Source of the DNA: Macrostomum lignano
Lineage: Eukaryota
Assembly (NCBI GenBank): GCA_002269645.1
Contig: NIVC01002892.1
Location: 1 to 64,000 of the forward strand
Length of the DNA stretch: 64,000 nucleotides
Direction: 5' to 3'
Shown here: one piece after another, positions 1,801 through 33,470 of the stretch
Numbering within the stretch: position 1 is the stretch's first letter
Layout of the letters: every line of letters begins with the position of its first letter
Notes under the pieces: generated by a model
What the model saw: only the letters and a program-made list of their open reading frames with translations
Told to the model about the DNA's origin: nothing
Databases searched by the model: none
Made by a program: the position numbers and the translations under genes

Positions 1801-1823
1801 CAAAAAAGTAATTTGCAACTTAC

Positions 1824-6223: not shown

Positions 6224-6487
6224 TCTAGACCATAGATCGTATATATTCCCTAGATGGGCCACTGTGTACTTAACCGCGCCCATAGACTCAATGAATTTCT
6301 TGAAAATTTTAGCGAACACCGTCTACTCGTACATATTGTTTAAGTTTCTTACCATGCATCACAAAAAATTGCTATGTCCCTCAGCTACTGAACTCGCTTT
6401 TTCGGGGGATCAAATTTTCAACATACATGTACTCGTAGTTTGAATAGAGTGGCCCATCTAGGAAATATACGATCTACATGGCCTAGA
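6224..6487. mobile_element. Small MITE-like element with ~35-40 bp inverted ends
   Basis: TAGATCGTATATATTCCCTAGATGGGCCACT (ends 6263) is nearly the reverse complement of AGTGGCCCATCTAGGAAATATACGATCTA (starts 6448). Confidence 0.65.
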
Positions 6488-9550: not shown

Positions 9551-9551
9551 A

Positions 9552-9760
9552 CGGGGACAGGCCCATGGCCCAATCTAGCTCAGCCAATGAGAAAGCAGTA
9601 AGGAGAGAGGTCAAAGTAAAACTCTGCCTAGGGGGACAGGCCCATGGCCCAATCTAGCTCAGCCAATGAGAGAGCAGTAGGGAGAGAAGTCAAAGTTAAA
9701 CTCAGCCTAGGGGAATCTAGCTCAGCCAGTCAGAAAGCAGTAAGCAAAGAGCATAAAGTC
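9552..9760. repeat. About 2.5 tandem copies of a ~60-80 bp unit containing CTAGCTCAGCCAATGAGA
   Basis: AATCTAGCTCAGCCA recurs at ~9572, ~9651 and ~9714. Confidence 0.7.
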
Positions 9761-11433: not shown

Positions 11434-13395
11434 TCAAGCTCGTTGCTGAGATTCTACTCCGCCTCCGCCTCCACCGGCACCACCGCCGCTTGCGCCCTGC
11501 TGCTGTTGTTGCTGTTGCTGTTGTTGCTGCTGCTGCTGCAGACGGGCCTGGGCAACTCCGGCTGACTGTTGCGGCTGCTGCGAGTAAAGATGCAGCGACG
11601 GGCCAACAAATCTATTGGCGGCAGCGGCTGCCATCTGATGATAGTGCTGAGGCGCATAGCTGGCAGCGCTAGCTGGCACTCCGGTAAACTGAGCAGCAGC
11701 TTGATAGGCGTACATGGCGGCTACTTGCTGCTGCTGCAGCTGGTGATAGACGCTAGCTGTTGGCTGCTGCGGCTGCTGCTGATGCTGCGGAGGCGAAGTA
11801 AGATGCTGAGCAGCGGCGGCAGCGGCGGCAGCAGCAGCAGCTGACTGGCTAGTAGCAACGCTGGCAGCTGGCTGTTGGCCAAGCTGAGAAGGACTACCAG
11901 TTGAAAAAAAGTATCCGGGTGCACCGCCAGTCGGATAGACGGCTGGCAGATTAGCGGCCGCCATAGCCGTTGGATGATAAGCGAACGGGTGAGCAAAATA
12001 GAGCCCAGCCGTGGCAGCGTGAGCCGGAATACTGGCCGGATAATTGCTAGCCACGTGAACCAAGTCCATCTGTTGCTGCTGCTGTTGATGTTGGTTAGCA
12101 ACAGCGACATTAGCGGCTGCGGTGGCCGCCGCGGCAGTCGGATTGATACGGACAGGCGCAGGAGCCAAGGCGTAGCGCTGATCGGGATCATAGCGGTAGA
12201 CGCTAGTACCTTCCGGGGTCAGCAGCGGACCGCGCAGATCAATAAATACAAAATCGCCGCGGGATAGCTCTGAAACGCGGGCGGGCACTAGGCGATAGAC
12301 GGAGAGATCGTCGCGCAGGTACACCTGGGCGTACTGCGGCTGCGGACTTGGAGAAGAGCCGACGTTAACAACACCGACAGCGGTTTCGTCAGAAACGGCG
12401 TTAGTTGCCGATTGGTCGTTGCGCCTATGGCCGCTATTAATCTTGGCTTGTTGCTGCTGTTGCGATTCGTGGTAGCCGCTGCCTACAATCTCTTTGCGAC
12501 GCTTGTCGTAATCCTGGCGGCGCTCTTCAAATGAGCGCGGCGGCGTGGCCTGCTGCTGCCCGTACGGCGAGCCACCTTTCGGCGTCGAGGGTGGACCTTC
12601 GCGGCGAAGGATTTTCTTTTCGCCATTGAGCACAGTTGGACTGGCTTCTTTGTTACCGCTATTGCCAGGCGTAGCTGGATGGCCGCCATTCTGGCTGCCG
12701 CCGCATAGCTGATCGCGCAGCTCGTAGTATCGCGCCAGATCGCTAATCGAGAAATTCCAATTGCGAAAGTGCTCCTTCTGGCGTTCGATCCGAATAGTGG
12801 AGCTCTGGTATGGCCCCATTATGTTGTGATCTAAGCCATAGAATGCGCAAAGCTTGTGCATTAGCATGCGAATACGCGGCTCCTGGTTACTCCAAAGTGT
12901 CTCGTCACCGTCCTGCGAGCCGTCATCAAGAATTTTGGCCTGATGCTTGAGCCAATAATCCAGCTCAAGCAATATTGCGCGATCCTTTTTCAGATTATCA
13001 TGCGACAATGTCTTCTCTAAAAAGCTAGCAATATCGTCGTTCAATGTGTCCCGTACGCCATGTCCGCTCTCTATCTTTAAATAGGCAGACAGTTTTTTAG
13101 TTAGCGCTTCCAGCTCTTCAAGCTGCTCCGGAGTGCCAGTAGGCGTTATTTTAGCTTTAGCTGGCGACTTATTCTCCGATGTCAGGCTGCCATCAGCAGC
13201 GCCAGTACCAGAGGGCGCATTCGATCCAGCGGCAGCGGAGGACGACGGCGGACTGGCGTTGCCAGAAGAGGCGGCGGGCACAGAAGCTGGCTCAATGGCA
13301 GAGCTGCCGCCGCCATTTGTGGCAGCGCTGGGCATTGCAGCTGAAGCTGCCGACTCGTCTGCCTTTTTAACTTTAGCGCCAGAAGCTGACGACAT
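11434..13395 (-). CDS. R3H and SUZ domain RNA-binding protein (R3HDM1/2, ARPP-21, encore family), 653 aa, single coding exon
   Basis: KDRAILLELDYWL...RIRMLMHKLCAFYGLDHNI (R3H, RxxxH), KKILRRE...SFEERRQDYDKRRKEI (SUZ), followed by a Q/A/P-rich tail. Confidence 0.85.
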   Translation of the reverse strand: MSSASGAKVKKADESAASAAMPSAATNGGGSSAIEPASVPAASSGNASPPSSSAAAGSNAPSGTGAADGSLTSENKSPAKAKITPTGTPEQLEELEALTKKLSAYLKIESGHGVRDTLNDDIASFLEKTLSHDNLKKDRAILLELDYWLKHQAKILDDGSQDGDETLWSNQEPRIRMLMHKLCAFYGLDHNIMGPYQSSTIRIERQKEHFRNWNFSISDLARYYELRDQLCGGSQNGGHPATPGNSGNKEASPTVLNGEKKILRREGPPSTPKGGSPYGQQQATPPRSFEERRQDYDKRRKEIVGSGYHESQQQQQAKINSGHRRNDQSATNAVSDETAVGVVNVGSSPSPQPQYAQVYLRDDLSVYRLVPARVSELSRGDFVFIDLRGPLLTPEGTSVYRYDPDQRYALAPAPVRINPTAAAATAAANVAVANQHQQQQQQMDLVHVASNYPASIPAHAATAGLYFAHPFAYHPTAMAAANLPAVYPTGGAPGYFFSTGSPSQLGQQPAASVATSQSAAAAAAAAAAAQHLTSPPQHQQQPQQPTASVYHQLQQQQVAAMYAYQAAAQFTGVPASAASYAPQHYHQMAAAAANRFVGPSLHLYSQQPQQSAGVAQARLQQQQQQQQQQQQQQGASGGGAGGGGGGVESQQRA

Positions 13396-14085
13396 TATCT
13401 GGCGCTGATGGCTACTGGCTTTCTTAAATAGTAGGATGAGCTAACTTTCAATCAAATGCCAACACAAACACAAACACTTACAGTAACGCTTTTATACACT
13501 TTCTTTAACCTGCGAATTTTAAAGCCAAAAACTCTTGATCAGCTTTCTTTTCTTTATCCTTTAGCAGCTTTTCTAGTGATGGACTATATTCAGAGAAACA
13601 GCAGAACAGCTAGCAACACGAAGACAAAGGACTCATCAATTAAAATTCAAGTCATCACAGTTCCAAGCATCAATTCACATTTAAAACCACATCTTAGCAG
13701 ATTTTTTTGCTCTGCTAGGATGCTAAGTAATATAAAAGTATTCATGCATTATCCAATATTTTTTTCTTAAGTACCAACCCTCAATAAAATTGTTCATCTT
13801 ATTAATATGCCACTATGCTAGGACTAAATACTCAACATAGAAATATTAAGCACTCTAGATGGAATTCAATAGTCATATTGAATCAATATAGTTATACAAA
13901 TTTATAACCACATGTTGTCATAGGCCACAAGCCTTCAAATATGACTTTAATATGTGCTTTATATGCACAAGAAAAAATATATAAATGTAGGATTGTAAAT
14001 ACACATAACTTAGCAGATTCTAAGTGTTACACTTGTCCTTGCATATTAGCACTTACAGTAGATTTAGAATTTAAAATAATTTAAA

Positions 14086-14330
14086 ATGATATGTCATTCA
14101 GCTCACAATGACACTAGGAAGCTGGGTTTGGCAAAAAAGTGGCAAAAATTGGACTTAGGAAAGATGAGAACAAGCAAGGGGATAATTATAGAGACTACTT
14201 TATGAGCTCAAGCCTCAAGTTATCATAATAGTACCTAATTATCCCCATGCTTGTTCTCTAAGTCTAATTTTTGTCGCTTTTTTGTCAAACCATGCTTTCT
14301 GGTGTCACTGTAAGCAGAATGACATATCAT
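14086..14330. mobile_element. Fold-back (palindromic) MITE-like element
   Basis: ATGATATGTCATTC... and ...GAATGACATATCAT begin ~110-bp imperfect inverted arms. Confidence 0.75.
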
Positions 14331-14854
14331 TTGTGTATATAGGTTACTTGGGCTCCACTTTATGAGCTTAAGTTGACATGCCCTTTATTTTGTCTAGATA
14401 TTACATTTTGAAAAAAATATTGGCTTGCATTTTATGACAGTTTATTCTAGAACTTATTATTGTTTAAATGTAAAAAATATAATAGTCTTTATTTTTGTAA
14501 GTTTCACCATTTTTAACAAACCATTTCTATGAAAAAGATAATATACAAGACAATCAAAGTTTTGTCATTGTTTAATTTTTTGCACATTGGGCTTCTTTTA
14601 AATTGATTTTAATTGTTATTATAGACAATGTGATATTATAGACAATCTTTTACTAAAGCATAATTTTTCAGCCACTCTTGCTGGCTTGAGAATCTATAGC
14701 ATTTTTTACTACCCTTGAGTGACTGTCAGTTTCAAGCAAAGCCATATATGCCGTCATAAATTTCTAATACCCATATGACCTATCTGAACCAGATGGGTGA
14801 AATGGCTGCCAGCCAAGGTAAGTTGCAAAATTGAAAATGCAAAAAAATGAAAAT

Positions 14855-14960
14855 TTGGGGGAAGAAAGAAAGGAGATGAAGAGAAAAGGAAAAGAAAGGA
14901 GGAAGAAGAGAGGGGAAAGAGGAGAGAGAAAGAAAAAGAAAAGAAAAGAGGAAAAGGCAA
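14855..14960. repeat. Purine-rich (GA) low-complexity tract
   Basis: Seen directly. Confidence 0.8.
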
Positions 14961-15134
14961 GAAAATTCATATAAAAAGTGAAAATTATTTTGCAATTGGG
15001 GGAACTAAGTTGCAATTGAGAGGAACTAAGTTGCAATTGGGAGGAACTAAGTTGTAATTAGGAGAAACTAAGTTGCAAATCTAGACAAAACTAAGTTGCA
15101 CTGGACGGGTGAAATTTTGAGGTTGGGTATGTAT

Positions 15135-16000
15135 GTATGCCATTATCCATTATGAATGGAGATATGGCACAGCAACAAAAGAAATTGAAGCCTATTTATA
15201 TAAGCAATATGGGGAGTCTATACTATCATAACATACTATCATCTGCTAGATTCATAGTTTTGAAAGAGGCAAAGGTGACTTCAAAGACAAGCCTTGCAAT
15301 AGTAGACCCAAGACTTTTATCAACCAAGAGTATCAATAGTATCTCTTTTATTTATCTTGCAATAGTAGACTCAAGACTTTTATCAACCAAGAGTATTATC
15401 AATAGTATCTAAATATTCTTTGACAAGGATAGGCAAGTGACTATTGTTAGGATAGAAGAGGCCTATGGCATTAGTTATAGTAGTATGCAGTCTATTCTAA
15501 TAGTCTAACTAGGAATATTGAAAGTTTGTACCAGATAGGTGCCAAAACTCCTGACTACAAAAATGCAATGCAATTGGATATAGGAATGCTCGTATTTACT
15601 CCACCTAATGCAACATTGCCAAGAAGAATTCTTTGATTCAATTATGACAAGGGATGAGCCAATGTTTTTTCTATATAAGCCAGAGACTAAAGCTCAAAGC
15701 ATACAATAGAAACACCCAAATAAAACTACTCTACTAAAGGCTAAGATATTTATATCAATGAAAAAAACAGATAGGCACTATTTTCTAAGATGGGCAAGGG
15801 ATATTGCTAATTAAGTGGCTTTTTAAAGAATAAAAAGACTCTATATGAGTGTAAGACTTTAATATTGCCACCTTTGCTAGCTAAAAAAAGCAATCAAAGA
15901 GAAGAGTCTTAAAAAGTTCATTAGAGACATTAAACTGCTCTATGACAATGCATTAATTATATAGGGTTATATATTTATATAGAGTGCTTACACATTTTGA
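15135..16000 (+). pseudogene. Fossil mariner transposase, heavily mutated
   Basis: Conceptual translation gives AIIHYEWRYG...YGES...RPKT, DRQVT...LGILKVCTR*VPKLLT, IMTRDE (VTGDE), YKPETKAQSIQ*KHP, IF*DGQGILLI and LLYDNA (LHDNA), with many stops and frameshifts. Confidence 0.85.
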
Positions 16001-16314
16001 GCAAGTAAAATAAAGGAGACTATTTGACTGATGCCAAAATTAAAGAGATTTAATTTGGTAATATAACAATATAGACCTAAATGTACATCACTTGTTTCTT
16101 ATATTTATATTGCAACAAACTATTATAACCTGCAGATTTTGAACCCACTGAGTTCTAATCCCTAGAACAATATTTTTAAATCTGAAGTCATACTCCAACA
16201 AATATCTATTAATAGTTAGAATAGAGGTAAATAAAAATTGAAGTAAATTAAGATTTGAGGGTACATTGATCATTCTTGGTTAGTGTTGCCATGGAATAAC
16301 AAGCAATGTCTGTC

Positions 16315-17148
16315 TAAGGCCTGTATAAAGAACTCTGGCCTCTTGCCTCTGCATCTCTCTTTGTCCCTTGGGTGTTCTGAAACTTCTATCTCCTCTTTTC
16401 TCTCTTTCCTTTTGTTTCTTCTCTCTTCTTCCCTTTTCCTGTCCTTTCTATTCTCATCTCTCATCTTGCTTATCTCCACTCTTTTTTTACTCTTTCCTCT
16501 TTTCCCTCTGTTCTTTTATCTTTTTCCTCTCTTTTCTCAGCTCTCTTATCTTTTTTCTTTTCTCTTCTTCTTTCTTTCTCTTCTCTTTTCTTCTTCTCTT
16601 AGCTCTCATATTCTCTCATCTCTTTCATCTTTCCTCTTTTCTCTCAGCTTTCTCATCTTTCCTCTTATCTCTTTTTTTCTTATTTTCTCTTTTTTTTCTA
16701 TCCCTTTTATCTCTTCCCTCTTCTTTTCTTTTTCCTTTTCTATCCCCTCTATCTCTTCTCTCTTCTCTTAACTCTTTCTCCTATTATCTCTTCTTTTTAA
16801 TCTCTCCTCTTCTATATGTTCTCTTTTTAACTCTCTTTTTCTTTTTCCTCTACTCTCTCTTCTTTTATCTCATCTTTTTTATATCTCATCTCTCTCTTCT
16901 CTCTTTTTGTCTCTCTTATCTCCTTTTCACCTCTACTGTCTTCTCACTTCTTTTTCCCTTCTCTTTCCTTTTTTCTCTGCCTTTTTTCTCTTTACTTTCT
17001 TGTCTTTTCTTATCTTTTATCTGATCCCCTCTCTCACCTTTCTTCTCTTTTAGTTGTCTATTCATTCTTCTTTCCACCCTCATCTACCCTTGCATCCATT
17101 AGCTAGATTCTTTATCTGGCCTTTGAGATAAAAGTCTGCCAATCTCTG
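16315..17148 (+). mobile_element. Degenerate copy of the hAT/Buster MITE seen at 39023, with a long CT-rich core
   Basis: Right end GGCCTTTGAGATAAAAGTCTGCCAATCTCTG resembles GGCCCTTGAGGTAAAAACGTTTGCCGAACCCTG; AACTCTGGCC near the left end resembles AACTCCGGCC; pyrimidine tract ~16385-17090. Left boundary is approximate. Confidence 0.55.
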
Positions 17149-18130
17149 CTTTAAAAGCCAGTTTGTAGGACATAGTACTCTCATGGTTGTTTTATTCTAG
17201 GGCCTATTCATTGATTGCTTTGATTAGGTCATCCTTCTAGCCAATTGGCAGCCTTAAGAGGAACTTATATATCTCTAACTCCACAATTCCATATATCTAA
17301 TATTGTGGCTAACCTAGGATTGATGCTTTAAAGTTTGTTCAATTAATAAATAATCATTTTTCAAACCATTTTATTGAGACTTACAAACTATTCTTCTATA
17401 TAACTTTGTTTAAGAAAATAATACAAATCAATAAAAGTCTTTTTAAAAAAATGATTATTTAAAAGGACCTTAAACTAATAATATACTAAATATGTATTGT
17501 ATATTAAAAATCCTAGGAACTAAAGTAGCTAAAACAAAGGAGAAAGTCCTAAAAGACTTCCAAATAAATGAGATTGAACTTTTGCTATTTCCAATATTGA
17601 AAAACTTGCTCTAAAGATGAATTCCGGTTGTTTTGCCTCCAAACCATTTTGGCCATGTACATTTCACCCCTAGACCATTTTGCCCATAGTCTGTTTCACC
17701 CATAAACCAGTTTGGCAAAGGGCATTTCGGCCAAAATGATGATTATGCATTTTAGAAATACAGCCATATATATATATCTTTATTTTCTTTTTTCAATGCT
17801 AATTTATAGTTTTAATTTGTAATAATATATGATCTGAATTGTTGCCATAACAATTGTGTTATTGCGTTATTGCGATTTTGTTTATTATGATTGTAAATTA
17901 AATTATGAGTTTTTTTAAAGTCATTCCATCAATTATTTAAACCAATTTGTACATTTAGAAGGTGAGAAAGGATTTCTTGGTCAATTAAAGCACAAAGCAT
18001 AAAATCGTGACAAAGTATAAAAGTAAAAATGCTATATAAAATTAGTCATTTCAATCAAAGCACAAAGTGTAAAACCCTGATCAAGTTATTTAGCAAAATC
18101 TAAGTTGCTCTATTGTGATTTTAGTATACA

Positions 18131-21100
18131 CTAGCAATCTTCGCCCCCCGATGGGGGACATCTGGATAGAATCCTTGTTCTTTACAAATAACAAATAGAC
18201 AGCGAAATAAAGCCTTCATAAAAAGCAACAGACATTCCCGCTAAAAACAAAACATCCCAAGACAGCAAGCATCCTCAGACAGCATTCAAGCATCGATCCC
18301 CAAATAGCGAAATCCTCCAAACTGCAAGCATCCCCCAGATAGCAACATCCCCCCGATAGCAAGCAACCCCAGATAGCAAGCATCCCCCAGATAGCAAGCA
18401 TCCCCCAGATCCCAGATAGTAAGCATCCCCCAGACTGCAAGCAACCCCTGATAGCAATCATCTCCCAGATAGCAAGCAATCCCCCAGACCGCAAGCAACC
18501 CCAGATAGCAAGCATTAACCTGGATACAAAGAGACCTTATAGATATCTAGCAACCCCCTCTTAGATAGCAAGTACCCTCCACCCCCCAAGAGCAAGCATC
18601 TCCCAATAGCAAGTTACCCCAGTAGCAAGCATCCTTCCGATAGCAAGTTTCCATCCTTAAATAGCAAGCATCCACCAGAGAAAGTAGCTAGTGCAACAAT
18701 TTCCTTAGCTTTATAGTGGCTCCATTTTGTTTGGCATGACACTTCTTTTATGTTTGAAACGGTGTCTCTTTTATGTTTAAAAAGGTGGCTCTTTAATGTT
18801 GACATAGTGGCTCTATGTTTACCATGGCAGCCCTTTTACGTTTGAAATGTTGTCTCTATTATGTTTGACATGGTGGCTCTTCTATGTTTGACATGGTGTC
18901 TCTTCATTGTTTGACATGGTGGCTTAGTTGTTTGACATGGTGGCTCTTTTATGTTTGGCATGGTGGCTCTTTTATGTTTAACATGGTGGCTCTTTAATGT
19001 TCGACATGGTGGCTCTTTAATGTTTGACACTGAGTCACGTAAATGTTTGACATGATGGCTCTTTTATATTTTACATGGTAGCTCTTTTAAATTTTACATG
19101 GTGGCTGTTTATGTTTGACATGGTGTCTCTTCTATGTTTGACATGGTGGCTCTTTAATGTTCGCCATGGTGGCTCTTTTATGTTTGACATGGTGGCTCTT
19201 CTATGTTTAACATGCAGTCACATATATGTTTGACATGATGGCGCTTTAATGTTTGACATGGAGTCACGTATATGTTTAAAATGGTGGCTCTTTTATGTTT
19301 GATATGGTGGCTCTTTTATATTTTACATGGTAGCTCTTTTATATTTTACATGGTGGCTCTTTAATGTTCGACATGGAGGCTCCTTAAGGTTTGACATTAA
19401 GTCATGTATATGTGGCTGTTTTATGTTTGACATGATGGCTTTTGTATATTTGACATGGTAGCTCTTTTATGTCTGACATGGTAACTCTTTTATGTTTGAC
19501 ATTGTGGCTCTTTATTGTTTGAGATGGAGTCACGTATATGTTTGACATGGTGGCTCTTTTATGTTTGACATGGTGGCTGTTTAATATTCGACATACAAAA
19601 AAACCTATACAAAGAAAACCGAGAAACTGCTCAAATAAAGTGCAATCCAAAAAGAAATCATCCCAAGACAGCAAGCATCACCCAGAGAGAAAACATCCCC
19701 CAGATAGCAAGTACCCCCCCCCCAGATAGCAAGCATCCCCCAGATAATAAGCACCCCCCAGATAGCAAGCATCCCCCCAGATAGCAAGCATCCCCCAGAT
19801 AGCAAGCATCCCTCAGATAGCAAGCACCCCCAGATAGCAAGCATCCCCCAGATAGCAAGTACCCCCCAGATAGCAAGCATCCCCCAGATAGCAAGCATCC
19901 CCCAGATAGCAAGCATTCCCCAGATAGCAAGCATCCCCCAGATAGCAAGCACCCCCCAGATAGCAAGCATCCCCCAGATAGCAAGCATCCCCCAGATAGC
20001 AAGCACCCTCAGATAGCAAGCATCCCCCAGATAGCAAGCACCCCCCAGATAGCAAGTATCCCCAAATAGCAAGCATCCACCAGACAATAAGTAGCTAGTG
20101 CGAAAATTTCCTTAGCTTTATAGTGGCTCCTTTAAAATTGGCATGACTTAAAATTGGCATTGGCTGGCAATACTTTTACGTTTGAAATTGTGTATATTTT
20201 ATGCTTGACATGGTGGCTCTCTTATGTTTGACATGGTGGCTCTTTAATGTTCGAAATGGTGGCTCTTTAATGTTCGAAATGGTGGCTCTTTAATGTTTGA
20301 CATAAAAACACCTATATGTTTGACATAAAGTCACTGATATGTTTGACATAAAGTCACTTTTACGTTTGACATAGTGGCTCTTTAATGTTTGACATAGTGG
20401 CTCTTTAATATTCTACATGGTGGCTCTTTAATATTCGACATGGTGGCTCTTTTATGTTTGACATGGTGGCTCTTTAATGTTCGAAATAGTGGCTCTTTAG
20501 TGTTTGACACGGTGGCTTTTTAATGTTTGACATAGTGGCTCTTTAATATTCTACATTGTGGCTTTTTTATGTTCGAAATAGTGGCTCTTTTATGTTCGAA
20601 ATGGTGGCTCTTTAATGTTCGACATGGTGGCTCTTTAATGTTAGACATGCTAGCTCTTTAATGTTCGACATAGTGGCTCTTTTATGTTTGCCATGGTGGC
20701 TCTTTAATATTTTACATGGTGGCTCTTTTATGTTTGGCATGGTGGCTCTTTAATGTTCTTCATGGTGGCTCTTTTACGTTTTACATGGTGGCTCTTTTAT
20801 GTTTGACATAGAGTCACGTATATGTTTTACATGGTGACCATGTAATGTTTGACATGGTGCCTCTTTTATGTTTGACATTGTGCTTTTTTATGTTTAGCAG
20901 TTTCGTGTTTTCAAGGTGTTTTAATAAAAAAATTATTTTGCACTACTAAGATGCGAACCCAGGTCACTACGTTGGCAGTCCAATCTGTTCGTATCTAGGC
21001 TATCTCTTTTCTATGAATTGTGGCCCTTATAATTCAATTCTTACAGCAAGTCAATTAAAGTAAAAAGTTATGACATAATCAATTTCTCAGTCAGCCAGTA

Positions 21101-21485
21101 TCAGTCTCAATTTAAGTTAGCAATATTGGTTACGCAATTTAAATCAAGTCGTGTGTGCATTTCTTCGACACTGTTTTCAACTTGTTGTGATGCAATCTTT
21201 ATCAGAATTGAAATTCAGTCAGTCAGGTTTTTCTCTAGCATTCTTACAATGCATTTCAAGTCGAAAATTTGGCTTGACCTTTGCAAAAAAGCATGTTTTT
21301 CAAATATTTAATCCCTTTAGAATTGAGCAATTTCTTAGCCAAGATGTATATACCGTCCCAGGAAAATTTCTGATCGAATGGTGCAAGTTTGAAGAAAATC
21401 GGTTGAGCCAATTTTTCTGAAATCTATCGCATACCCACAGACAAACAAACAAACTCAACTTTAGTATATTAGATTAGTATATAGA
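18131..21485 (-). mobile_element. Non-autonomous Helitron (copy A) carrying satellite arrays
   Basis: Minus strand reads A|TCTATATACTAAT..., (GTTT)n, then ...CCCCCATCGGGGGG hairpin...ATTGCTAG|T. This gives TC and CTAG termini inserted between A and T. Homologous to 24633-27138. Confidence 0.8.
18260..20890. repeat. Alternating satellite arrays inside Helitron A: ~17-18 bp AGATAGCAAGCATCCCCC (18260-18690, 19670-20070) and ~21-22 bp ATGTTTGACATGGTGGCTCTTT (18730-19590, 20200-20890)
   Basis: Units read directly. Confidence 0.9.
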
Positions 21486-21906
21486 TTGTTGGTGTTTTAG
21501 CCCTGGAGTGGGGGTGGTTACTATTGAACCTTGCTTATAATAAATTGTATTGTATTGTTGCATGCATGGTTGTCAGCAGTGCTCTTGGCACTTTCGTCTT
21601 ATCTTACATACTTTTAGCTCATGACTTTGTTCATTTCAACCCTGGTCCAAATTGGAGGCGAAACAGTCCATGGCTAAAACTGTCTGTGGGTGAAACGGTC
21701 TGTGGGCGAAATGGTCTGGGGGCAAAATGTCTATGGCCAAAACAGTTTATGGGCAAAACAACCGATTACCCTAAAGATGCAATTGGGCTTTTGTAACTAC
21801 AGTAATATTATCAATAAACCAATAGTAAAAATATAATCCAAGATAAAAACTAATGCTATAGGCATTTAGAGGCTACCAAAGCACTAGGCCAAGTTAGTAT
21901 CATTGT

Positions 21907-22097
21907 CAGGGGCGTAGCCAGGAATTTTCTACGGGGGGGGGGGATACACCAAGGTGAATTTCCTACGGGGGGGATACACCAAGGTAAAAGTGCTCACATG
22001 GTAGCATGTATAGCGAAAAAGTGCAACAAAAAAGTTTTGGTCAGGCTCTTCGAGGGGGGATACATCCCCCCTGATCCCCCCCCTCCCTACGCCACTG
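21907..22097. mobile_element. hAT-type MITE (191 bp)
   Basis: TIR CAGGGGCGTAG / CTACGCCACTG; perfect 8-bp TSD ATCATTGT at 21899-21906 and 22098-22105. Confidence 0.88.
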
Positions 22098-24632
22098 ATC
22101 ATTGTGTGAGAACTTAATTGAGAAAGTAAAATATTTTTTCATTCACTAGGCCTAGTTAAAAAAATAATAGACCTTTTTGATTTTCCCTTGTTTGCTAGAC
22201 TATAGAGCTAGAAACTTAATATATTAAATAAAAACTAAATATATTATATATACCAAAAAATATTTATTTATGACAAAGTGTTTATCTCTGTGTTTTTGTT
22301 ATATAGGCCCCTATATTATATTGCTAAGTAAAAATAAAATTATAAAGAGGCATAAAAAAGTAAGATAAAAATTTTCAAGGTTTCATTTTCAAGGGTTGGG
22401 CTGATTCCCTCCCCCTTAAAAAGTTAGGGATCAGGAGTATTCATGACCCATGAAAATTATGGCATAGTTTTAATACAAGCCACCTAATTAGGGGCCTATA
22501 TGATTATGAAACATGCAGCAGCTGAACAAAAGCTTTGTTTATTTTTTCAGGCCTTATTAATAATTATATATGACGTCCTTAGGTAAAATTTGAATTCCAA
22601 CTTTATTTTATTTGACATATTAAAAAGAAGGCCCTTGGCACTAGGCTCAAGCTTAGACCCAACAATGCTAGAACTTAAATACACGTTGGCAAATGCGTTC
22701 ATCAATTTTTTATTCAACCAAACGTTCATTTGATAATTGAGAATAATTTTCACTTTTACAAGCCTAAAATACTTTAATTTAAAATCAAATCCTAACACAA
22801 CCTCGACAAAGTCGATCACCTGGCAGCCTGGCTTATTACGAAAAAATCGATCCTTAAACTATGGACTAAAGCCGCAGCATACAAAACGATTTGAGCAATT
22901 TGATGAAATATTAAATTTTTTTTTTTGACTATGCTTTTTTTGCAAGCCAGTGTTTTTTTTTCTAGCAAGATGCGAAAAAACGAGTGTTCCATAACAGAAA
23001 AGGTAATGTTTGCTACTGTGGCTGTGTAGCAATATACATTTTGTTTTGTGCATTGCTAGGCAAAAGACATTTTTAAATCAAGTTAATCGCTGAGAGTTTA
23101 AATAAAAGATGAATTTATTATTTTTATCCATCCACGGTCATGAAAGCCAGAATTTGAGAATTCAGTATAAACAAGTAAAAGCTAAATTTTGTTTACCAAA
23201 TGTAACTTAATGAAAATTTAGCTCGCATATTCAGCTCTACAGTGGGTAGGATGATTCAATGAAAACTTATCATTTTATTAACAGGATTGTAGCAAATATA
23301 ATGTGCAATTGTGCGAATACGAATATTGCACCAGTTGCACCAGTCACCAAACTGATACTCAGATACTGTCTATCCTGATTTCTATATTTCTATATTAGCA
23401 TGTAACCATAAGTCCGAACTTTCCAGCCTCTAGGTGACTTCTAGATGACTTTTAAAGCAGACAAGCCAGTTAGTCAAGGTTATTGAAAATTGAAAATTTT
23501 AACTTTAACTTGCAGATGTGGCAGAAAAAGTAACTAGTTCCTACTAATACTAACTAGTCTATATTTTTCTAAGAAGGCAACTTTCATAATTAAAAAATAT
23601 TAATATAGGCCCCTACTTATGACATTTATGGAATAACTATTTATGCCACTATTATTTTAAGTTTTAATAGCCAGAACAACAAAGTTTCAATTACCAAACC
23701 AATTTTTTTTTAACTATAAGGGTATCCCAAAAGTTCTTAGAATCTTTGCTTTAGCTCCTCAGTACCTTGACCAATATTTATGCTTTATATGTCAAACTAA
23801 AGATAATTTTTCAATAAATAAAGTTTGTCATTTAATTTCCTTTCTATCTGATTTTAGTCAAGAGTTATATTAGGAAATGTGAATAAAGGTCAATACTACT
23901 AGGCCTAGTGTTATACAACCTTAAATGTCTATGGTGTCCTTTTTCTATCATAAATTTTTTGCCACACTTAGAGAAAGACATAGCAACTGTGTCTATAAAT
24001 ATAATGCAAAAACTTATAGACACAGCCGCCGTGTCTCTAAGTTTTTGCATCATAGTGACAATGGTATCAGGGTGATAATAGAATGCTTGAAAGACTAGCT
24101 GAAGATGCCTGGCAGTTGAGGTTTGCCTATTATTGAAGCTTGGTAAGACAAATCTGACATTGCTGCAACATGATCCTCACAGTCAACTGGTACCACCTGT
24201 TGAAGGTGCCAATAGTATCTGGGTGATGATAGAATCCTTGAGAGACTAGCTGAGGATATCTAGCAGTTGAGGCTTGCTTGCTGTCAAGGCTTGATTGATA
24301 AAACTAAAGAATTTTGCAATAGTATATCTATAGTCACTTGGTGCCACTTGTTGAAGCTGAAGTCCAAAAGCTCTGCCTAGATGCAGGCCAATAACCAAAA
24401 AAGTCAGCTAATGCAAACATGTGAGTGATCAATGTGCTGATGAAATTTGGAGGCTAGGCAAGGCTGCACTAAAGTGCAATACTAGTTGGCACACAGGGGT
24501 GTACTGAATACACTAGCACTTATGGGAAAATCTGACCTAGCAGAATTGTTGAATATCTCAACATTCCAGAGGACTGGCAACTTGATTTTTGTTGAAAAAG
24601 CTGCACAACAAAAATTAGCTCATGTTCTTATA

Positions 24633-27138
24633 TCTATATACTAATTTTGCGCTATATGCATGCGTATATGCGTGTAATTGATTTTTTCGAGTATGGCTCA
24701 ACCAATTCTCATCAAACTTGCACCATTCGATCAGAAATTTTCCTGGGATGGCACATGCATCTTGGCTAAGAAATTGATCAATATTAAAGGGATTAAATAT
24801 TCAAAAAACATGATTTTCTGCAAAGGTCAAGCAGCTCTTTCGACCCAAAATGCATTGTAAGAATGCTAGAAAAAAACCTGACTGACTGAATTTCAATTCT
24901 GATAAAGATTGCATCATAGCAAGTTGAAAACAGTGCCAAAGAAATGCACACACGACTTGATTTAAATTGCATAACCATATTGCTAACTTAAATTGAGACT
25001 GATACTGGCTGACTGAGAAATTGATTATGTCATAACTTTTTACTCTAACTGATTTGCTATAAAAATTGAATTATAAGGGCCACAATTCATGTTCTCCAAT
25101 CAACAAGAGATAGCCTAGATGTAAACAGACTGGACTGCTAATTCAGCGACCTAGGTTCGAATCTTAGTAGTGCAAAATAATTTTTTTATTAAAACATCTT
25201 AAAAACAAAATGCTAAACATAAAAGAAGCACAATGTCAAACAAAAGTGGCACCATTTCAAACATTAAAGGCCACCATGTCAAACATATATGTGACTCCAT
25301 GTCTAACATTAAAGAGCCACCTTGTCAAACATTAAAGAGCCACCATGTCAAACATTAAAGAGCCACCATGGAGAACATTAAAAAGCCATCATTACAGACA
25401 TTAAGGTGCCACCAGGTCAAACATTAAAAAGCCATTATGTTAAACATTAAAGAGCCACCATGTCAAACATAAAAGAGCCACTATGTCAAACATCAACAAG
25501 TCACCATGTCAAGCATATATATGACTCCATTTCAGACATTAAAGTGCCACCATGTCAAACATTAAAGAGCCACCATGTCAAACATTAAAGAGCTACCATG
25601 TCTAACATTAAAGAGCCACCATGTCAAATATCAAAGAGCCACCATTTCAAACATTAAAGAGCCACCATGTCAAACATTAATGAGTCACCATGTCAAGCGT
25701 ATAAGTGACTCCATGTCAGATATTAAAGAGCCATCATTGTAGACATTAAAGTGCCACGTCTGTGCCATGTCTAACATTAATAAGTCACCATGTCAAGCAT
25801 ATACATGGCTCCATATCAAACATTAAAGAGCCACCATGTCGAACATAAAAGAGCTACCATGTCTAACATTAAAGAGCCACCATGTCAGACATTAAAGAGC
25901 CATCATTGCAGACATAAAAGTGCCACCAGGTCAAACAATAAAGAGCCACCATGTCAAACATTAAAGAGCCATCATGTCAAACATTAAAGAGCCACCATGT
26001 TGAACATAAAAGAGCCACCATGTCGAACATTAAAGAGCCATCATTATAGACATAAAACTGGCACGATGTCAAACATTAAAGAGCCACCTTATCAAACATT
26101 AAAGAGCCACCATGTCAAGCATAATAGAGACAATTACAAACGTAAAAAGAAGCGTCATGCCAATCATAAAGTAGCCACTATAAAGCTAAGGAAATTGTTG
26201 CACTAGATACTTATTGTCTGGTGGATGCTTGCTATTTAAGATAGATAATTGCTATCAATTGGATGCTTGCTATCTGGGGGTGCTTGCTATCTGGGGATGC
26301 TTGCTATCTGGGGGTGCTTGCTATCTTGGGGGTGCTTGCTATTAGGTGGATGCTTGCTATCTTGGGGTGCTTGCTATTAGGTGGATGCTTGCTATCTTGG
26401 GGTGCTTGCTATTAGGTGGATGCTTGCTATCTGGGGGTGCTTGCTATTAGGTGGATGCTTGCTATCTTGGGGTGCTTGCTATTAGGTGGATGCTTGCTAT
26501 CTGGGGTGCCTGCTATCTAGGGGTGCCTGCTATCTGGAGATGCTTGCTATCTGGAGATGCTTGCTATCTGGAGATGCTTGCTATCTGGGGGTGCTTGCTA
26601 TTAGGTGGATGCTTGCTATCTGGGCATGCTTGCCATCTAAGGGTGCTTGCTATCTTGTGGTGCTTGCTATCTAAGGGTGCTTGCTATTAGGTGGATGCTT
26701 GCTATCTGGGGGTGCTTGATTTCTAAGGGTGCTTGCTATTAGGTGGATGCTTGCTATCTTGGGGTGCTTGCTATTAGGTGGATGCTTGCTATCTGGGGAT
26801 GCTTGCTATCTAAGGGTGCTTGCTATTAGGTGGATGCTTGCTATTAGGTGGATGCTTGCTATCTGGGGGTGCTTGCTATCTAAAGGTGCTTGCTGTTAGG
26901 TGGATGCTTGCTATCTGGGGTGCCTGCTATCTGGGGGTGCTTGCTATCTGGAGATGCTTGCTATCTGGAGGTGCTTGCTATCTGGGAGGTTGCTTGCTAT
27001 CTTGGGATGTTTTCTTTTTGCATTGCACTTCATTTGAGCAGTTTTTCTATTGTCTATGTGAAGGCTTTTTTGGCCGTCTTTTTGATACTTGTAGAGAGCC
27101 AGAGATTCTATCTAGATACCCCCCATCTAGATTGCTAG
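24633..27138 (+). mobile_element. Non-autonomous Helitron (copy B) carrying the same two satellite arrays
   Basis: A|TCTATATACTAAT at 24632-24645 and ATTGCTAG|T ending 27138-27139. The ~550-bp 5' segment aligns with the reverse complement of 20940-21485. Arrays at ~25230-26120 and ~26220-27005. Confidence 0.8.
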
Positions 27139-28663
27139 TTTTGTCTATTCTGATATAGCAAAAAATTGTCAGGGGGAAGTCCCCCCTCTTGGTAGTTCAA
27201 TGAGCAGAAAAATGACTTGGTATTCCTACTGTTAAACAGTATACTTTTTATTGACAATGCCTAATGGATTTGTCAAAACCTAGGAAGAGCATCTGGCATA
27301 TGACTACTAGTTATATATTTAAAACTAGCAAAATATATTTAGTATACAAAATTTGTTGAAAGATCTTTGTAATCTGTGTAGATTTATGCATCCTACTCCT
27401 TAGAATAGAAAGCTACATGCATCCTTTAGATGCACTATGCAATAGCTATGGCTAAGCTGTTGTTTGCACATCTGGCCTAATTTAGGCAGGTATATTAAAT
27501 TATTATTATACTATTATCTATTGGTAACCCATATTACTATTGGCTACAGATAGTTATGATATTGATATTGATAACCATTTAGTCTAATATTGACTTAACA
27601 TATTTATTGCTATTAGAAATAATAAGTTAAATCCAAAAAAATTATTTTAATGACCCAAAAAAGTATACCAAAAGGTAGGTCCATGCTTTAAAAAATCACA
27701 ATGTGATAGTATTTTAAGGTTCTTTCTTATAGGTATTTTTATGAATGTAGCTATTTCCAATTGTATCCTTTTTGCACATATCTGTTCATTAATTATATAT
27801 GCATTAAGATAATAAAATTGATGGATTGCTAGTATGAGTAGTTTTCATTTTGCATTTTTTGCTTAAAGCTATCAATAAAAACATAAGAGTTGGGTAAAAC
27901 TTTGTAAGGTTTTAGGTTTTATAGGTATACAGAATTTAGCATGGTTGGCTAAGGCTTATTGATTATCCCCAGGAGTACACTTTTTTATCTTTGTTATAAA
28001 TAGTATATGTAAGAAAGTAGAATTCTAAATAGTATTAAATTAATTCAGTAAGGTGGTGTTGACTGGATGAACAACAGATCCATAGAGCATTTATAATAAA
28101 TTAGTTAATTACACCAGCATTAGCTGGGGTAGTTGAGGGTGTGTATGGTGAGTGGCGACCCCCCCCCCCCCTAGTCTTTGGACTGAACAGCTGAGCTGTT
28201 GGTTGCACATCTGCCCATTGGCATTAGGATCTGTGTAATAAATTATTGTTATTATTATTATTATTAGTATTAGTTAAATTAAAAGTAAAAAAGCCTATAT
28301 TCAAATTATTATACAAAATGTATATGGCAAACAATCAGGTTCTTAGTACACTTAGCTTCTATATAAGATTAGTACAAACTCCATACCCATAGGGGTCTAT
28401 AGTATAAAATAAAATGAATATGGTATGTTCACCGTAATACAAGGTCAATGTTTGAAGTTAAAAAAGCTATTATGCAATTATTAAGCTAAAAGATAGAGAG
28501 AACATTTACTATTTTATTTACTGAAATTTAAGAAGTACACCCAGCACTATTGTATCTGCTGCATGCTTTCCTGCGCATGCCGCTTCGGCGGTTGTTAATA
28601 GAAACTAAAACAGCCAAGGCTATTTTTTATTGCTTTAATCATAAATTGATTGCGTAGAAAGTA

Positions 28664-29274
28664 ATGCCCAGTAAGCTCCCGATTCGAGTTGTGCACGTGT
28701 CCGGCCAAGACGAGGGCTATCCGGCCATCGAGCTCAACCGGCATTCGCCAACCACGCGCGGCTGGGTTAGCTCCAGATTCTGTCTGTACCCGCAGGATCT
28801 TGTGGTTTACCTGGAGCAGAGATCGCGCATTAGAAAAGTGCAGATTTTATCTCACCAGTACCTAATCGCCTCCAAGATTGAATTCTTTGTTGGCGACGTG
28901 CCAGACGGTGTTTCGCACAATCTGCAGAACGCGCGCTACTCCCGCCTGGGCTACGTGGCCCTGTCAGACAATGAGAAAACCGGATTCCGAGCTCGCGAAC
29001 TCAAATCTGTTCACGTTGACGCTGTTGGCGTCTATCTAAAATTAGTGATTCACAAGAACTACGTGAATAAGCACAACCTGTACAACCAAGTGGGCCTTGT
29101 TGCCGTCAACCTGATTGGCGATCCGCTCTATTCACCAATGGACATTGTCAGCCGGCCGGACAAAGCGCCAGACGATCGGGTATTCGGGCCGGATTATATC
29201 TCGCCGCTCGACGATTTGGCGTTTGATATGTACCAGGTGGGTTGCGGGGTATTTTCTTAGATAGATAGATAGAC

Positions 29275-29308
<34 letters not shown>

Positions 29309-29374
29309 TTAGTAAGATAGATAGATAGATAGACAGACAGATAGATAGATAGATAGACAGATAGATAGACAGAC

Positions 29375-29414
<40 letters not shown>

Positions 29415-29480
29415 TTAGTAAGATAGATAGATAGATAGACAGACAGATAGATAGATAGATAGACAGATAGATAGACAGAC

Positions 29481-29565
<85 letters not shown>

Positions 29566-32500: not shown

Positions 32501-33470
32501 CTGCCCGATGCTAAAACGATGCACGTCCTGTCGGCAGGTTGTAGAGATCGCCATGCTGTCAGAGCACCTGTTGAACGAGTGCGAGCACAGCGCCGAGTTC
32601 CGCAAATGCCCGTATTGCACCGAGGCCATCCCTGTGGCCGAGCATGAGCAGCATGTTCGGTTTGTGAAAATGACCAATGTTCTTTGACTCTCTGTTTCTG
32701 TGACTAGAATTTGCTTATTAACTCTCAGGTTCGGCCACCGTTCCTTTTCCGCATCCTCAGCTTTAATCACCCGCCACCCGACCTCTCAGCCTGAGCTCCC
32801 AGCCATCCCAGATCCCCACACTGAGCTCCCAGCCATCCCAGATCCCCACACTGAGCTCCCAGCCATCCCAGATCCTCAGACTGAGCTCTCAGCCTTCCCA
32901 GATCCTCAGACTGAGCTCCCAGCCATCCCAGATCCCCACACTGAGCTCCCAGCAATCCCAGATCCCCACACTGAGCTCCCAGCCATCCCAGATCCCCACA
33001 CTGAGCTCCCAGCCATCCCAGATCCCCACACTGAGCTCCCAGCCATCCCAGATCCCCACACTGAGCTCCCAGCCATCCCAGATCCCCACACTGAGCTCCC
33101 AGCCATCCCAGCTATTTTAGCTGCTTTGCTTAAAGAAGTAGAAGAGGCACAGAATATTTTAACAGCTGAAAGACAGGTTGGAAATCAGCGAGTAAGAAAG
33201 TACCCCAATTCTTTTCCAACCCATTAACTGCCTGGCTCCAGTGACAACCTGTGCAACCACGCCGTGGAAGGCCAGAGCCATTGTCCGCTGTGCCACGAGA
33301 ATTTCCCAACCGGAGACGACGGCTGGAAGGAGCATCTGACTGGCTCGGACGGCTGCAAGCAGAATCCTAGGCGCCTCATCGCGCTTAACCGCAAGGCGGA
33401 GGACGCCGGGGGCGGAGGCGGCGGCAATGGACAGTCGAGGAAGTCCAAACTTCCTCAGCCGAGGAAATAA
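28664..33470 (+). CDS. CEP104: Centrosomal protein of 104 kDa; 4 exons 28664-29236, 29641-30396, 31566-32659, 33242-33470 (883 aa)
   Basis: N-terminal jelly-roll region ([22 protein letters not shown]), LAFDMYQ|[15 protein letters not shown] coiled coil, TOG-like region ([12 protein letters not shown]), C-terminal zinc fingers (CIFC...HFWKSCPML...CPLCHENF). All introns GT-AG with consistent phases; total 2652 nt. Confidence 0.95.
29259..29575. repeat. (GATA/GACA)n microsatellite in CEP104 intron 1
   Basis: Seen directly. Confidence 0.98.
30463..30780 (+). mobile_element. tRNA-derived SINE in CEP104 intron 2
   Basis: Head GGCACAGCAGCTCGGCGATAAGCGCGTCTGACTC...CCCTTGGTTCGATTCC with a B-box; body homologous to the minus-strand copy at 42640-43056. 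Confidence 0.75.
30790..31455. repeat. 24-bp minisatellite GAGAATCGCAGATAAACATCCGTT in CEP104 intron 2
   Basis: Seen directly. Confidence 0.95.
32790..33112. repeat. 30-bp minisatellite CTGAGCTCCCAGCCATCCCAGATCCCCACA in CEP104 intron 3
   Basis: About 10-11 units. Confidence 0.95.

What the first reader, a model, noticed from the sequence alone, without database searches (positions are those of the whole stretch)
13650..28400. Sharply bounded ~15-kb CpG-free, C>T hypermutated domain with a RIP-like signature in an animal genome
Seen: CpG nearly vanishes between the divergent R3H and CEP104 starts. I count 1 CpG in 13801-14400, against roughly 20 in non-coding 10201-10800. TAG/CTA words are abundant, and repeat copies inside differ from each other or from intact relatives almost only by C>T/G>A. 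The flanking genes and the young mariner at 40.6 kb are CpG-rich, so gene-body methylation does not explain it. Established: CpA>TpA hypermutation of repeats is the hallmark of fungal RIP; animal methylation decay is mainly CpG>TpG. Inference: a repeat-targeted cytosine methylation/deamination system acting on CpG and non-CpG (notably CpA) sites, confined between the two promoters.
Basis: partly seen in the sequence, partly recalled or inferred. Interest (0 to 1): 0.78.

Follow-up and report, generated by a model that had tools for sequence, protein, structure and literature searches.

The report
CpG desert between two flatworm genes

Summary
The CpG desert is real. Window 13,404-28,573 has CpG o/e 0.23. 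The flanks are at 1.1-1.2 and other non-coding DNA at about 0.82. Each edge falls within 200 bp or less, just upstream of the R3H and CEP104 start codons. Tandem arrays whose units lack CpG explain only part of it: the 9.6 kb of non-tandem DNA holds 69 CpG against about 210 expected (P ~1e-29).

The RIP reading fails. TpA/ApT is 0.95, (CpA+TpG)/(ApC+GpT) is 1.41, and the composite index is negative. In paralogous pairs inside the block, transitions hit CpG 2.3 times as often as other C sites. CpA (0.245), CpT (0.240) and CpC (0.229) are equal. Outside the block, CpG is not hypermutable in two independent controls.

The window is Macrostomum lignano contig NIVC01002892.1. Reviews say this flatworm keeps DNMT1 and DNMT3 and has low 5mC. 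Gene bodies here, RPS6 included, have CpG o/e near 1.

Best reading: germline CpG methylation of a transposon- and satellite-rich intergenic block, stopped by two active promoters, followed by 5mC deamination.

Unexplained: a context-free surplus of transitions (ts:tv 2.15 inside, 0.9 outside) and a mild TAG/CTA excess.

The parts
13404..28573 (.). CpG-depleted intergenic block, with refined limits. It holds 108 CpG in 15,170 bp, o/e 0.23.
   Evidence: CpG positions, counts, sliding scan and Poisson test.
11434..13395 (-). Left boundary gene: a single 653-aa ORF encoding an R3H/SUZ-type protein. CpG o/e is 1.02. Its ATG lies 9 bp from the last dense CpG.
   Evidence: ORF. R3H domain of human KIAA1002, PDB 1WHR, E 8.6e-4. 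Weak SUZ match, E 0.016. Called as a gene on the contig.
28664..33470 (+). Right boundary gene: CEP104, 883 aa. My reconstruction has 4 exons: 28664-29236, 29641-30396, 31566-32659 and 33242-33470. CpG o/e over the gene span is 1.00. Dense CpG begins 90 bp upstream of the ATG.
   Evidence: Called gene with CEP104_N, TOG and ZnF domains. Pfam. Homologues. Splice model giving 883 aa.
13621..18104 (.). Left, most decayed block; its non-tandem DNA (13650-18150) has CpG o/e about 0.13. It includes a 2,034-bp CpG-free gap at 15591-17625. Contents: AT-rich DNA with no other copy in the window, a 250-bp hairpin at 14084-14332, a mariner relic, and CT-rich low complexity at 16300-17100.
   Evidence: No Pfam domain in six frames.
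15137..16000 (+). Degenerate mariner-type transposase relic with in-frame stops.
   Evidence: tblastn with the intact mariner of the window gives 37% identity over 93 aa at 15422-15700, E 1e-12 within the window. No Pfam hit on its own.
18105..27161 (.). Foldback-like inverted structure of about 9 kb. Left arm: 18105-19595, repeated at 19596-21415. Right arm: 24690-27161. The arms are built of 17/18-bp (CCCCAGATAGCAAGCATC) and 23-bp (TCTTTTATGTTTGACATGGTGGC) tandem arrays plus a 0.5-kb unique part. The non-coding interior is 21416-24689. CpG o/e is about 0.40 in its non-tandem DNA.
   Evidence: TRF, self-BLAST, inverted repeats, arm alignments. No Pfam domain in six frames.
27162..28573 (.). 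Right decayed block. There is 1 CpG in 27130-28400 (o/e 0.03). The part from 27826 onward is also present on the second contig, and 28014-28573 is identical there.

Best explanation
The block is old intergenic DNA of Macrostomum lignano, filled with transposon relics and satellite arrays. It has been CpG-methylated in the germline while its surroundings have not.

Proposed mechanism:
1. 5-methylcytosine deaminates to thymine.
2. Methylated CpG therefore turns into TpG or CpA much faster than other sites change.
3. The block loses CpG and a little G+C.
4. Methylation stops at the two divergent, active promoters (R3H and CEP104), which gives the sharp edges.

The foldback-like element at 18.1-27.2 kb has kept more CpG than the DNA around it. 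It may be a later arrival that is less decayed.

Shown here: the regional CpG loss; the CpG-specific excess of transitions inside but not outside the block; the lack of a RIP signature; and the species.

Taken from the literature: M. lignano keeps DNMT1 and DNMT3 and has low 5mC.

Inferred: that this block is or was methylated, that the methylation is in the germline, and that the promoters set its limits.
For: - CpG o/e is 0.27 in non-tandem block DNA against 0.84 in GC-matched non-tandem DNA outside. All other dinucleotides are alike, and CpA/TpG is slightly raised (1.14 against 1.09).
- 69 CpG are observed against about 210 expected, P 1e-29.
- Inside the block, transitions per C site in paralogous pairs are CpG 10/18 = 0.56, CpA 0.245, CpT 0.240 and CpC 0.229. 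Fisher's test for CpG against non-CpG gives odds ratio 3.95, P 0.009.
- Outside, the comparison with the second contig (98.8% identical) gives CpG 17/1161 = 1.5%, CpA 1.7%, CpT 1.2% and CpC 1.0%.
- Two old dispersed repeat pairs outside give CpG 4/40 = 0.10 against 0.11-0.18 for other contexts.
- The two arms of the inverted repeat, taken to be one duplication and so equally old, kept different numbers of CpG: 11 against 5. So decay happened in place after the duplication.
- There is no strand skew.
- The window is M. lignano Mlig_3_7, contig NIVC01002892.1.
- Reviews state that M. lignano keeps DNMT1 and DNMT3 and has low 5mC (PMC11292947, PMC9246332, PMC10658182).
- Gene bodies here have CpG o/e of 0.94-1.17, RPS6 included at 1.03.
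- The right edge is identical on the second contig, so it predates that duplication.
Against: - There are no methylation data for this locus. Everything rests on sequence composition and about 125 substitutions.
- The inside and outside spectra come from comparisons of different ages.
- The TpG/CpA gain (+5%) is smaller than the CpG loss predicts (about +13%).
- Non-CpG transitions are also relatively more frequent inside (76:40 against 54:78 transitions to transversions, P 1e-4). Pure CpG methylation does not explain that.
- TAG/CTA is enriched, also unexplained.
- The intact mariner and the minisatellites outside the block are not depleted, so 'repeats are methylated' is not a general rule in this window. 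They may simply be young.
- I could not read the primary bisulfite study (Wasik 2015).
Confidence: 0.65

Rival explanations
1. RIP-like repeat-induced point mutation. A machinery recognises duplicated DNA and deaminates cytosines, mostly CpA to TpA, as in Neurospora.
For: TAG/CTA is mildly enriched: o/e 1.15 against 0.81, and window medians of 1.19 against 0.84-0.90, P 0.016-0.043 uncorrected. Transitions dominate in unique paralog pairs, 86:40. Single anecdotal CA/TA and TGG/TAG differences occur at the arm termini.
Against: - TpA/ApT is 0.95 and (CpA+TpG)/(ApC+GpT) is 1.41, above the control value of 1.29. The composite index is -0.46.
- TpA o/e is the same inside and outside.
- CpA transitions are no more frequent than those at CpT or CpC (odds ratio 1.05, P 0.89).
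- CAG shows no excess (3/17 against CAA 7/33 and CTG 4/19).
- The most depleted parts have no second copy within this window.
- In the 23-bp arrays transversions outnumber transitions.
Confidence: 0.03
2. CpG methylation plus a second, context-free cytosine deamination or transition process in the same block. Possible sources are low-level non-CpG methylation by DNMT3, or a heterochromatin-specific mutation regime.
For: Non-CpG transitions to transversions are 76:40 inside against 54:78 outside (odds ratio 2.7, P 1e-4). Every inside pair has ts/tv of about 1 or more and most reach 2, while every outside comparison is near 1. G+C is lower inside (0.31-0.33 against 0.36-0.42), by more than the CpG loss accounts for. 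TAG/CTA is in excess.
Against: The differences are unpolarised, so T>C is not separated from C>T. The comparisons have different time depths. Tandem arrays do not show the effect: C>T relative to transversions is 1.44 inside and 1.47 outside (from the counts). No context preference was found. Lower G+C is also what greater age under the usual AT-biased mutation would give.
Confidence: 0.2
3. No regional methylation. The block looks CpG-poor only because it is made of repeat units that never had CpG and of very old AT-rich DNA.
For: About 35% of the block is tandem or low-complexity DNA whose consensus units lack CpG. Two arrays outside the block (44236-46102 and 61859-64000) are also nearly CpG-free for this trivial reason. 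Arrays inside the block are older (73-86% matches) than most arrays outside (85-96%).
Against: Non-tandem DNA is still at o/e 0.27 against 0.82-0.84. Age cannot remove CpG if CpG is not hypermutable, and outside the block it is not. Two old repeat pairs outside, 77-89% identical, keep their CpG. The edges coincide with the two promoters to within 200 bp.
Confidence: 0.08
4. Gene-body-type methylation of an unannotated transcription unit that fills the interval, such as a long non-coding RNA or a piRNA cluster.
For: Mosaic invertebrate genomes usually methylate transcribed units (background cited in PMC12460157). The interval is rich in transposon relics, as piRNA clusters are.
Against: No gene is called in 13396-23395 or 28014-28663. 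No Pfam domain appears in any frame. The genes in the window, RPS6 included, show no sign of gene-body methylation. No RNA data were available.
Confidence: 0.08

Closest known systems
CpG decay of germline-methylated DNA (5mC deamination), as in vertebrate bulk DNA and the methylated compartment of mosaic invertebrate genomes
   Same: CpG is lost selectively and other dinucleotides are unchanged. TpG/CpA is slightly raised. CpG transitions are in excess among paralogues. The CpG-replete, presumably unmethylated DNA at active promoters gives sharp borders.
   Different: The depleted compartment here is an intergenic block of transposon and satellite DNA, not gene bodies. Gene bodies, introns and most other intergenic DNA in the window are CpG-replete. 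Methylation itself has not been observed at this locus.
Transposon-only methylation without gene-body methylation (chaetognath Paraspadella gotoi, early-branching nematodes, ctenophores; PMC12460157)
   Same: Genes are CpG-replete, including a ribosomal protein gene, while a transposon-rich block bears the methylation footprint. The species keeps DNMT1 and DNMT3.
   Different: This is one locus and only a sequence footprint. In P. gotoi low-complexity repeats are not methylated, whereas here satellite arrays and low-complexity DNA inside the block are depleted too. The young mariner outside the block shows no footprint.
Fungal RIP (Neurospora crassa)
   Same: An AT-rich, repeat-containing block with sharp borders, in which transitions outnumber transversions.
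   Different: There is no CpA>TpA bias, the RIP indices are negative, DNA with no second copy in the window is affected, and CpG is the main target.
Foldback (FB-type) transposable elements
   Same: Long inverted arms built of short tandem subrepeats around a non-coding middle.
   Different: No target-site duplication, transposase or other copies were found. It may equally be an inverted segmental duplication of satellite DNA.

Membership tests
Fungal-type RIP | TpA/ApT raised well above control DNA, and (CpA+TpG)/(ApC+GpT) below about 1.03, giving a positive composite index | tested here: not met
   Values are 0.95 and 1.41, composite index -0.46. Control values are 0.89, 1.29 and -0.40.
Fungal-type RIP | C>T transitions concentrated at CpA, relative to CpT and CpC | tested here: not met
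   CpA 35/143, CpT 29/121 and CpC 11/48. Odds ratio 1.05, P 0.89. Arrays pooled from the counts: CpA 0.077, CpC 0.111, CpT 0.059.
Fungal-type RIP | Acts on duplicated DNA only | tested here: not met
   The blocks without any second copy in the window (13.65-18.1 kb and 27.2-28.4 kb) are the most depleted, o/e 0.13 and 0.03. Copies elsewhere in the genome were not searched.
Fungal-type RIP | RID/Dim-2-type cytosine methyltransferase and a premeiotic dikaryotic stage | not testable with these tools
   Only this window and about 35 kb of related contigs could be read.
5mC-driven CpG decay (methylated compartment) | CpG o/e far below that of neighbouring DNA of like G+C, other dinucleotides unchanged | tested here: met
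   0.27 against 0.84. TpA is 0.89 against 0.88 and GpC 1.48 against 1.38. P 1e-29.
5mC-driven CpG decay (methylated compartment) | CpG loss balanced by TpG/CpA gain | tested here: inconclusive
   CpA/TpG o/e is 1.14 against 1.09, and (CpA+TpG)/(ApC+GpT) is 1.41 against 1.29. The direction is right but the size is smaller than the loss predicts.
5mC-driven CpG decay (methylated compartment) | CpG transitions faster than other transitions inside the compartment and not outside | tested here: met
   Inside: 0.56 against 0.23-0.25, P 0.009. Outside: 1.5% against 1.0-1.7%, and 0.10 against 0.11-0.18. Numbers are small and unpolarised.
5mC-driven CpG decay (methylated compartment) | The organism has DNMT1/DNMT3 and 5mC | not tested
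   Taken from the literature only (PMC11292947, PMC9246332, PMC10658182). The primary paper is not held.
5mC-driven CpG decay (methylated compartment) | 5mC present at this locus in the germline | not testable with these tools
Transposon-only methylation without gene-body methylation | Gene bodies unmethylated, housekeeping genes included | tested here: inconclusive
   Footprint only. CpG o/e is 1.02 for R3H, 1.00 for CEP104, 1.03 for RPS6 and 0.94 for the ORF at 56.7-59.0 kb. Five genes only.
Transposon-only methylation without gene-body methylation | Transposable elements generally methylated | tested here: inconclusive
   The block of transposon relics is depleted. The intact mariner at 40670-41737 has o/e 1.17 and may simply be too young to show decay.
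Foldback transposon | Long terminal inverted repeats made of tandem subrepeats | tested here: met
Foldback transposon | Target-site duplication and multiple genomic copies | tested here: inconclusive
   The termini are fuzzy and no duplication was seen. The genome could not be searched.

The most novel reading that the evidence does not exclude
Macrostomum lignano, a free-living flatworm whose methylation pattern a 2022 review describes as unknown, may direct its low-level DNA methylation to heterochromatic transposon and satellite islands and not to gene bodies. That would add another animal lineage to the few with this fungus-like pattern. In those islands a second, context-free cytosine-to-thymine process, possibly non-CpG methylation, may act alongside CpG decay.
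Probability: 0.25. Interest if true: 0.55.

Novelty: new member of a known kind. Interest (0 to 1): 0.33.

Why it matters
The headline claim, a RIP-like genome defence in an animal, is not supported. What remains is a clean sequence footprint of regional CpG methylation in a flatworm said to have DNMT1, DNMT3 and little 5mC. [quoted passage not shown]

The footprint lies on an intergenic island of transposon and satellite DNA. A ribosomal protein gene and four other genes in the window show none. This hints that methylation in this model organism is aimed at repeats rather than gene bodies. That pattern is reported for only a few animal lineages (PMC12460157). Data types that already exist for M. 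lignano can test the idea directly. On its own, one locus is a modest finding.

Tried and rejected
- Rfam and tRNA scans of the window found nothing.
- Pfam on six-frame translations of the non-tandem parts of the block found nothing. The mariner relic alone also gave no Pfam hit. A first attempt with raw references failed on stop codons.
- Exact look-ups of the CEP104 first-exon ORF and of the intact mariner found no record, so I could not sample more of the genome.
- I reconstructed the spliced 883-aa CEP104, which is identical on both contigs, to fetch the second contig's copy of the block.
- The near-identical contig NIVC01004742.1 (L004) has 0 mismatches over 13.4 kb and is uninformative.
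- I tested whether the minority CpG variant TTCGAC of the 23-bp unit is ancestral. The CpG>CpA product TTCAAC is nearly absent, so this is inconclusive.
- A CAG/CWG-specific deamination idea, raised by the TAG excess and CAG deficit, found no support in the substitution data.
- The primary bisulfite paper (Wasik 2015) is not held.
- A chaetognath origin was considered from memory and dropped once the contig was identified.


Full report
**1. The observation**

A 1-kb profile shows CpG o/e of 0.00-0.28 in 14-20 kb and 23-28 kb, and about 0.5 in 20-23 kb. Almost everywhere else it is 0.6-1.35.

The list of CpG positions shows dense CpG up to 13403. Three stragglers follow at 13487, 13513 and 13619. 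After that there is roughly one CpG per 140 bp until dense CpG resumes at 28574. One gap of 2,034 bp (15591-17625) has no CpG at all.

Among all 14.75-kb windows of the 64 kb, those starting at 13501-13751 have the lowest o/e, 0.22.

The block is therefore real and sharply bounded. Its limits are better given as 13,404-28,573. It is depleted rather than 'CpG-free', and the depletion is uneven.

**2. Trivial causes**

The window is full of minisatellites. Arrays whose unit has no CpG are CpG-free for no interesting reason. Two such arrays lie outside the block, at 44236-46102 and 61859-64000.

About 35% of the block is such tandem or low-complexity DNA. With all arrays masked, the remaining 9,590 bp still has o/e 0.27. 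Non-tandem DNA of similar G+C outside has 0.84. That is 69 CpG against about 210 expected, Poisson P 1e-29. Repeat composition explains part of the effect, not the whole.

**3. What the block contains**

It lies between two divergent genes.
- On the minus strand, a 653-aa single-exon ORF starts at 13395. It has an R3H domain (PDB 1WHR, E 8.6e-4) and a weak SUZ match.
- On the plus strand, CEP104 starts at 28664. It is called as an 883-aa gene with CEP104_N, TOG and ZnF domains. I could reconstruct it as four exons.

No Pfam domain is found in any frame of the block, and no gene is called in the parts for which calls were listed.

The contents, from left to right:
- AT-rich DNA with a 250-bp hairpin at 14084-14332.
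- A degenerate mariner relic near 15.1-16.0 kb. It is 37% identical over 93 aa to the intact mariner of the window and carries stop codons.
- CT-rich low complexity at 16.3-17.1 kb.
- A foldback-like inverted structure of about 9 kb at 18105-27161. Its arms are 17/18-bp and 23-bp tandem arrays plus a 0.5-kb unique segment.
- A further 1.4 kb of AT-rich DNA.

The two outer blocks are the most depleted, o/e 0.13 and 0.03. The non-tandem DNA of the foldback structure is at about 0.40.

**4. Species**

The intronless RPS6 gene at 38014-38748 and the R3H ORF are found exactly on GenBank contig NIVC01002892.1 of assembly GCA_002269645.1, at the same coordinates as in the window. From memory, this is the Macrostomum lignano Mlig_3_7 assembly. 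The CEP104 hits fit that: they are closest to molluscs and flatworms, at only 65-75% identity.

Two related contigs exist.
- NIVC01004742.1 is near-identical (0 mismatches in 13.4 kb). It ends 1,469 bp into the block.
- NIVC01003439.1 is a second copy, about 98.8% identical in unique DNA.

The right edge of the block (28014-28573) is identical on that second copy, with the same CpG positions. The right edge at least is therefore older than the duplication.

**5. Test of the RIP reading**

RIP converts CpA to TpA. That predicts a TpA excess and a CpA/TpG deficit. None of this is seen.
- TpA o/e is 0.89 inside and 0.88 outside.
- CpA/TpG o/e is 1.14 inside and 1.09 outside.
- TpA/ApT is 0.95.
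- (CpA+TpG)/(ApC+GpT) is 1.41, above the control value of 1.29.
- The composite index is -0.46.
- There is no strand skew.

One caveat: CpG decay itself feeds the CpA/TpG pool and could mask a loss. So I also counted substitutions directly.

In paralogous pairs inside the block, transitions per C site are CpG 10/18 (0.56), CpA 35/143 (0.245), CpT 29/121 (0.240) and CpC 11/48 (0.229). The pairs are the unique arms, the hairpin, a tandem duplication at 24.0 kb and the arm termini. CpG against non-CpG gives odds ratio 3.95, P 0.009. CpA against CpT plus CpC gives odds ratio 1.05, P 0.89.

No trinucleotide context such as CAG stands out.

In the tandem arrays, changes from the consensus are not 'almost only C>T'. 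The 23-bp arrays have ts/tv 0.65-0.86, and C>T is 24-25% of their changes.

**6. Is CpG hypermutable only inside the block?**

Outside the block, the comparison with the second contig covers 11.2 kb of aligned non-tandem DNA. Transitions per C site are 1.5% at CpG, 1.7% at CpA, 1.2% at CpT and 1.0% at CpC. With long ORFs excluded, the values are 2.3, 2.1, 1.5 and 1.2%.

Two old dispersed repeat pairs outside the block (77% and 89% identical) give CpG 4/40 against 0.11-0.18 for other contexts.

So CpG shows no special mutability outside the block and a 2.3-fold excess inside, uncorrected for saturation.

Inside, the two arms of the inverted repeat, taken to come from one duplication and so to be equally old, retain 11 and 5 CpG. 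The 23-bp array in the less depleted sub-block keeps the CpG-bearing unit variant more often: 11/31 units against 4/37 and 4/40. Decay therefore happened in place and at rates that depend on position.

**7. Explanation**

A CpG-specific, strand-symmetric, regionally confined excess of transitions is the known footprint of germline 5-methylcytosine.

Reviews state that M. lignano, unlike planarians and parasitic flatworms, keeps DNMT1 and DNMT3 and has low 5mC (PMC11292947, PMC9246332, PMC10658182). One of them says the genomic pattern is unknown in free-living flatworms. I could not read the primary bisulfite study.

The gene bodies in the window have CpG o/e of 0.94-1.17. This includes RPS6, the type of gene that is methylated in gene-body-methylating invertebrates.

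The simplest reading is methylation of an island of transposon relics and satellites, excluded from two active promoters and from genes. It resembles the transposon-directed pattern described for a chaetognath, early nematodes and ctenophores (PMC12460157).

That methylation is or was present here, that it is germline, and that the promoters set the borders are all inferences.

**8. What remains unexplained**

- In the unique paralog pairs inside the block, transitions outnumber transversions 86:40. The outside comparisons give 71:78 and 24:27. Without CpG sites the contrast is 76:40 against 54:78, P 1e-4. The surplus has no context preference and is unpolarised. It compares different time depths, and the tandem arrays do not reproduce it.
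- TAG/CTA is enriched: o/e 1.15 against 0.81, and window medians of 1.19 against 0.84-0.90, P 0.016-0.043 without correction for 32 trinucleotides. CAG/CTG is somewhat low.
- G+C is lower inside than the CpG loss alone explains.

Together these leave room for a modest context-free C>T component, such as low-level non-CpG methylation or a heterochromatin-specific mutation regime. Greater age under ordinary AT-biased mutation could also account for them.

The copy of the block on the second contig would settle this.

**9. Verdict**

The RIP-like interpretation is not supported. The block is best explained as a methylation-decay CpG desert on an intergenic transposon and satellite island of M. 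lignano. That is a known kind of feature in a lineage where its distribution has not, to my knowledge, been described. It is of modest interest and can be tested directly with methylome data.

Noticed in passing
window 1-64000: The window equals GenBank contig NIVC01002892.1:1-64000 (assembly GCA_002269645.1, Macrostomum lignano). Contig NIVC01004742.1 is a near-identical duplicate of 1427-14866 (0 mismatches, 14 gaps) and stops 1,469 bp into the block. That may be an assembly break caused by the repeats.
   Followed up: partly
window 4622-5946: This 21-bp minisatellite (ACTCATTTTAGCGCCGCAGGC) lies outside the block. Its CpG positions carry C>T or G>A variants in 39/250 sites, against 0-4% at other C contexts. 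It may be a methylated array, or a few variant units may have been amplified.
   Followed up: no
window 18105-27161: A foldback-like 9-kb structure with long inverted arms made of 17/18-bp and 23-bp tandem arrays. The left arm is duplicated in tandem (18105-19595 and 19596-21415). The middle is non-coding, and no target-site duplication was seen.
   Followed up: partly
window 40670-41737 (-): An intact 355-aa mariner transposase (HTH_48 and DDE_3/Transposase_1 matches). It is 61% G+C with CpG o/e 1.17, very different in composition from the AT-rich relic at 15.1-16.0 kb.
   Followed up: partly
window 38014-38748 (+) and 28664-33470 (+); L005: RPS6 is intronless. RPS6 and the 883-aa CEP104 are each identical in protein sequence on the two contigs, although the surrounding DNA is 1.2% diverged and the minisatellites differ more.
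   Followed up: partly
window 28571-28583: CTGCGCATGCCGC, an NRF1-like palindromic motif as recalled from memory, sits exactly where dense CpG resumes, 80-90 bp upstream of the CEP104 ATG.
   Followed up: no
whole window: Twenty-eight tandem or low-complexity arrays with 4-39-bp units (mostly 17-39 bp) cover about 29% of the 64 kb, including CEP104 introns. The array at 61947-64000 has neither CpG nor GpC in its unit, which gives GpC o/e of 0.00.
   Followed up: partly
window 13404-28573 against outside: The transition:transversion ratio in unique paralog pairs is 2.15 inside the block. It is about 0.9 in the second-contig comparison and in old repeat pairs outside. TAG/CTA o/e is 1.15 inside and 0.81 outside. 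Both are unexplained.
   Followed up: partly
window 16300-17100, 39100-39700, 59900-60100: Three CT-rich low-complexity tracts are about 68-75% similar to each other. The one inside the block has no CpG. The one at 39-40 kb lies in a 1-kb bin with o/e 0.63.
   Followed up: no
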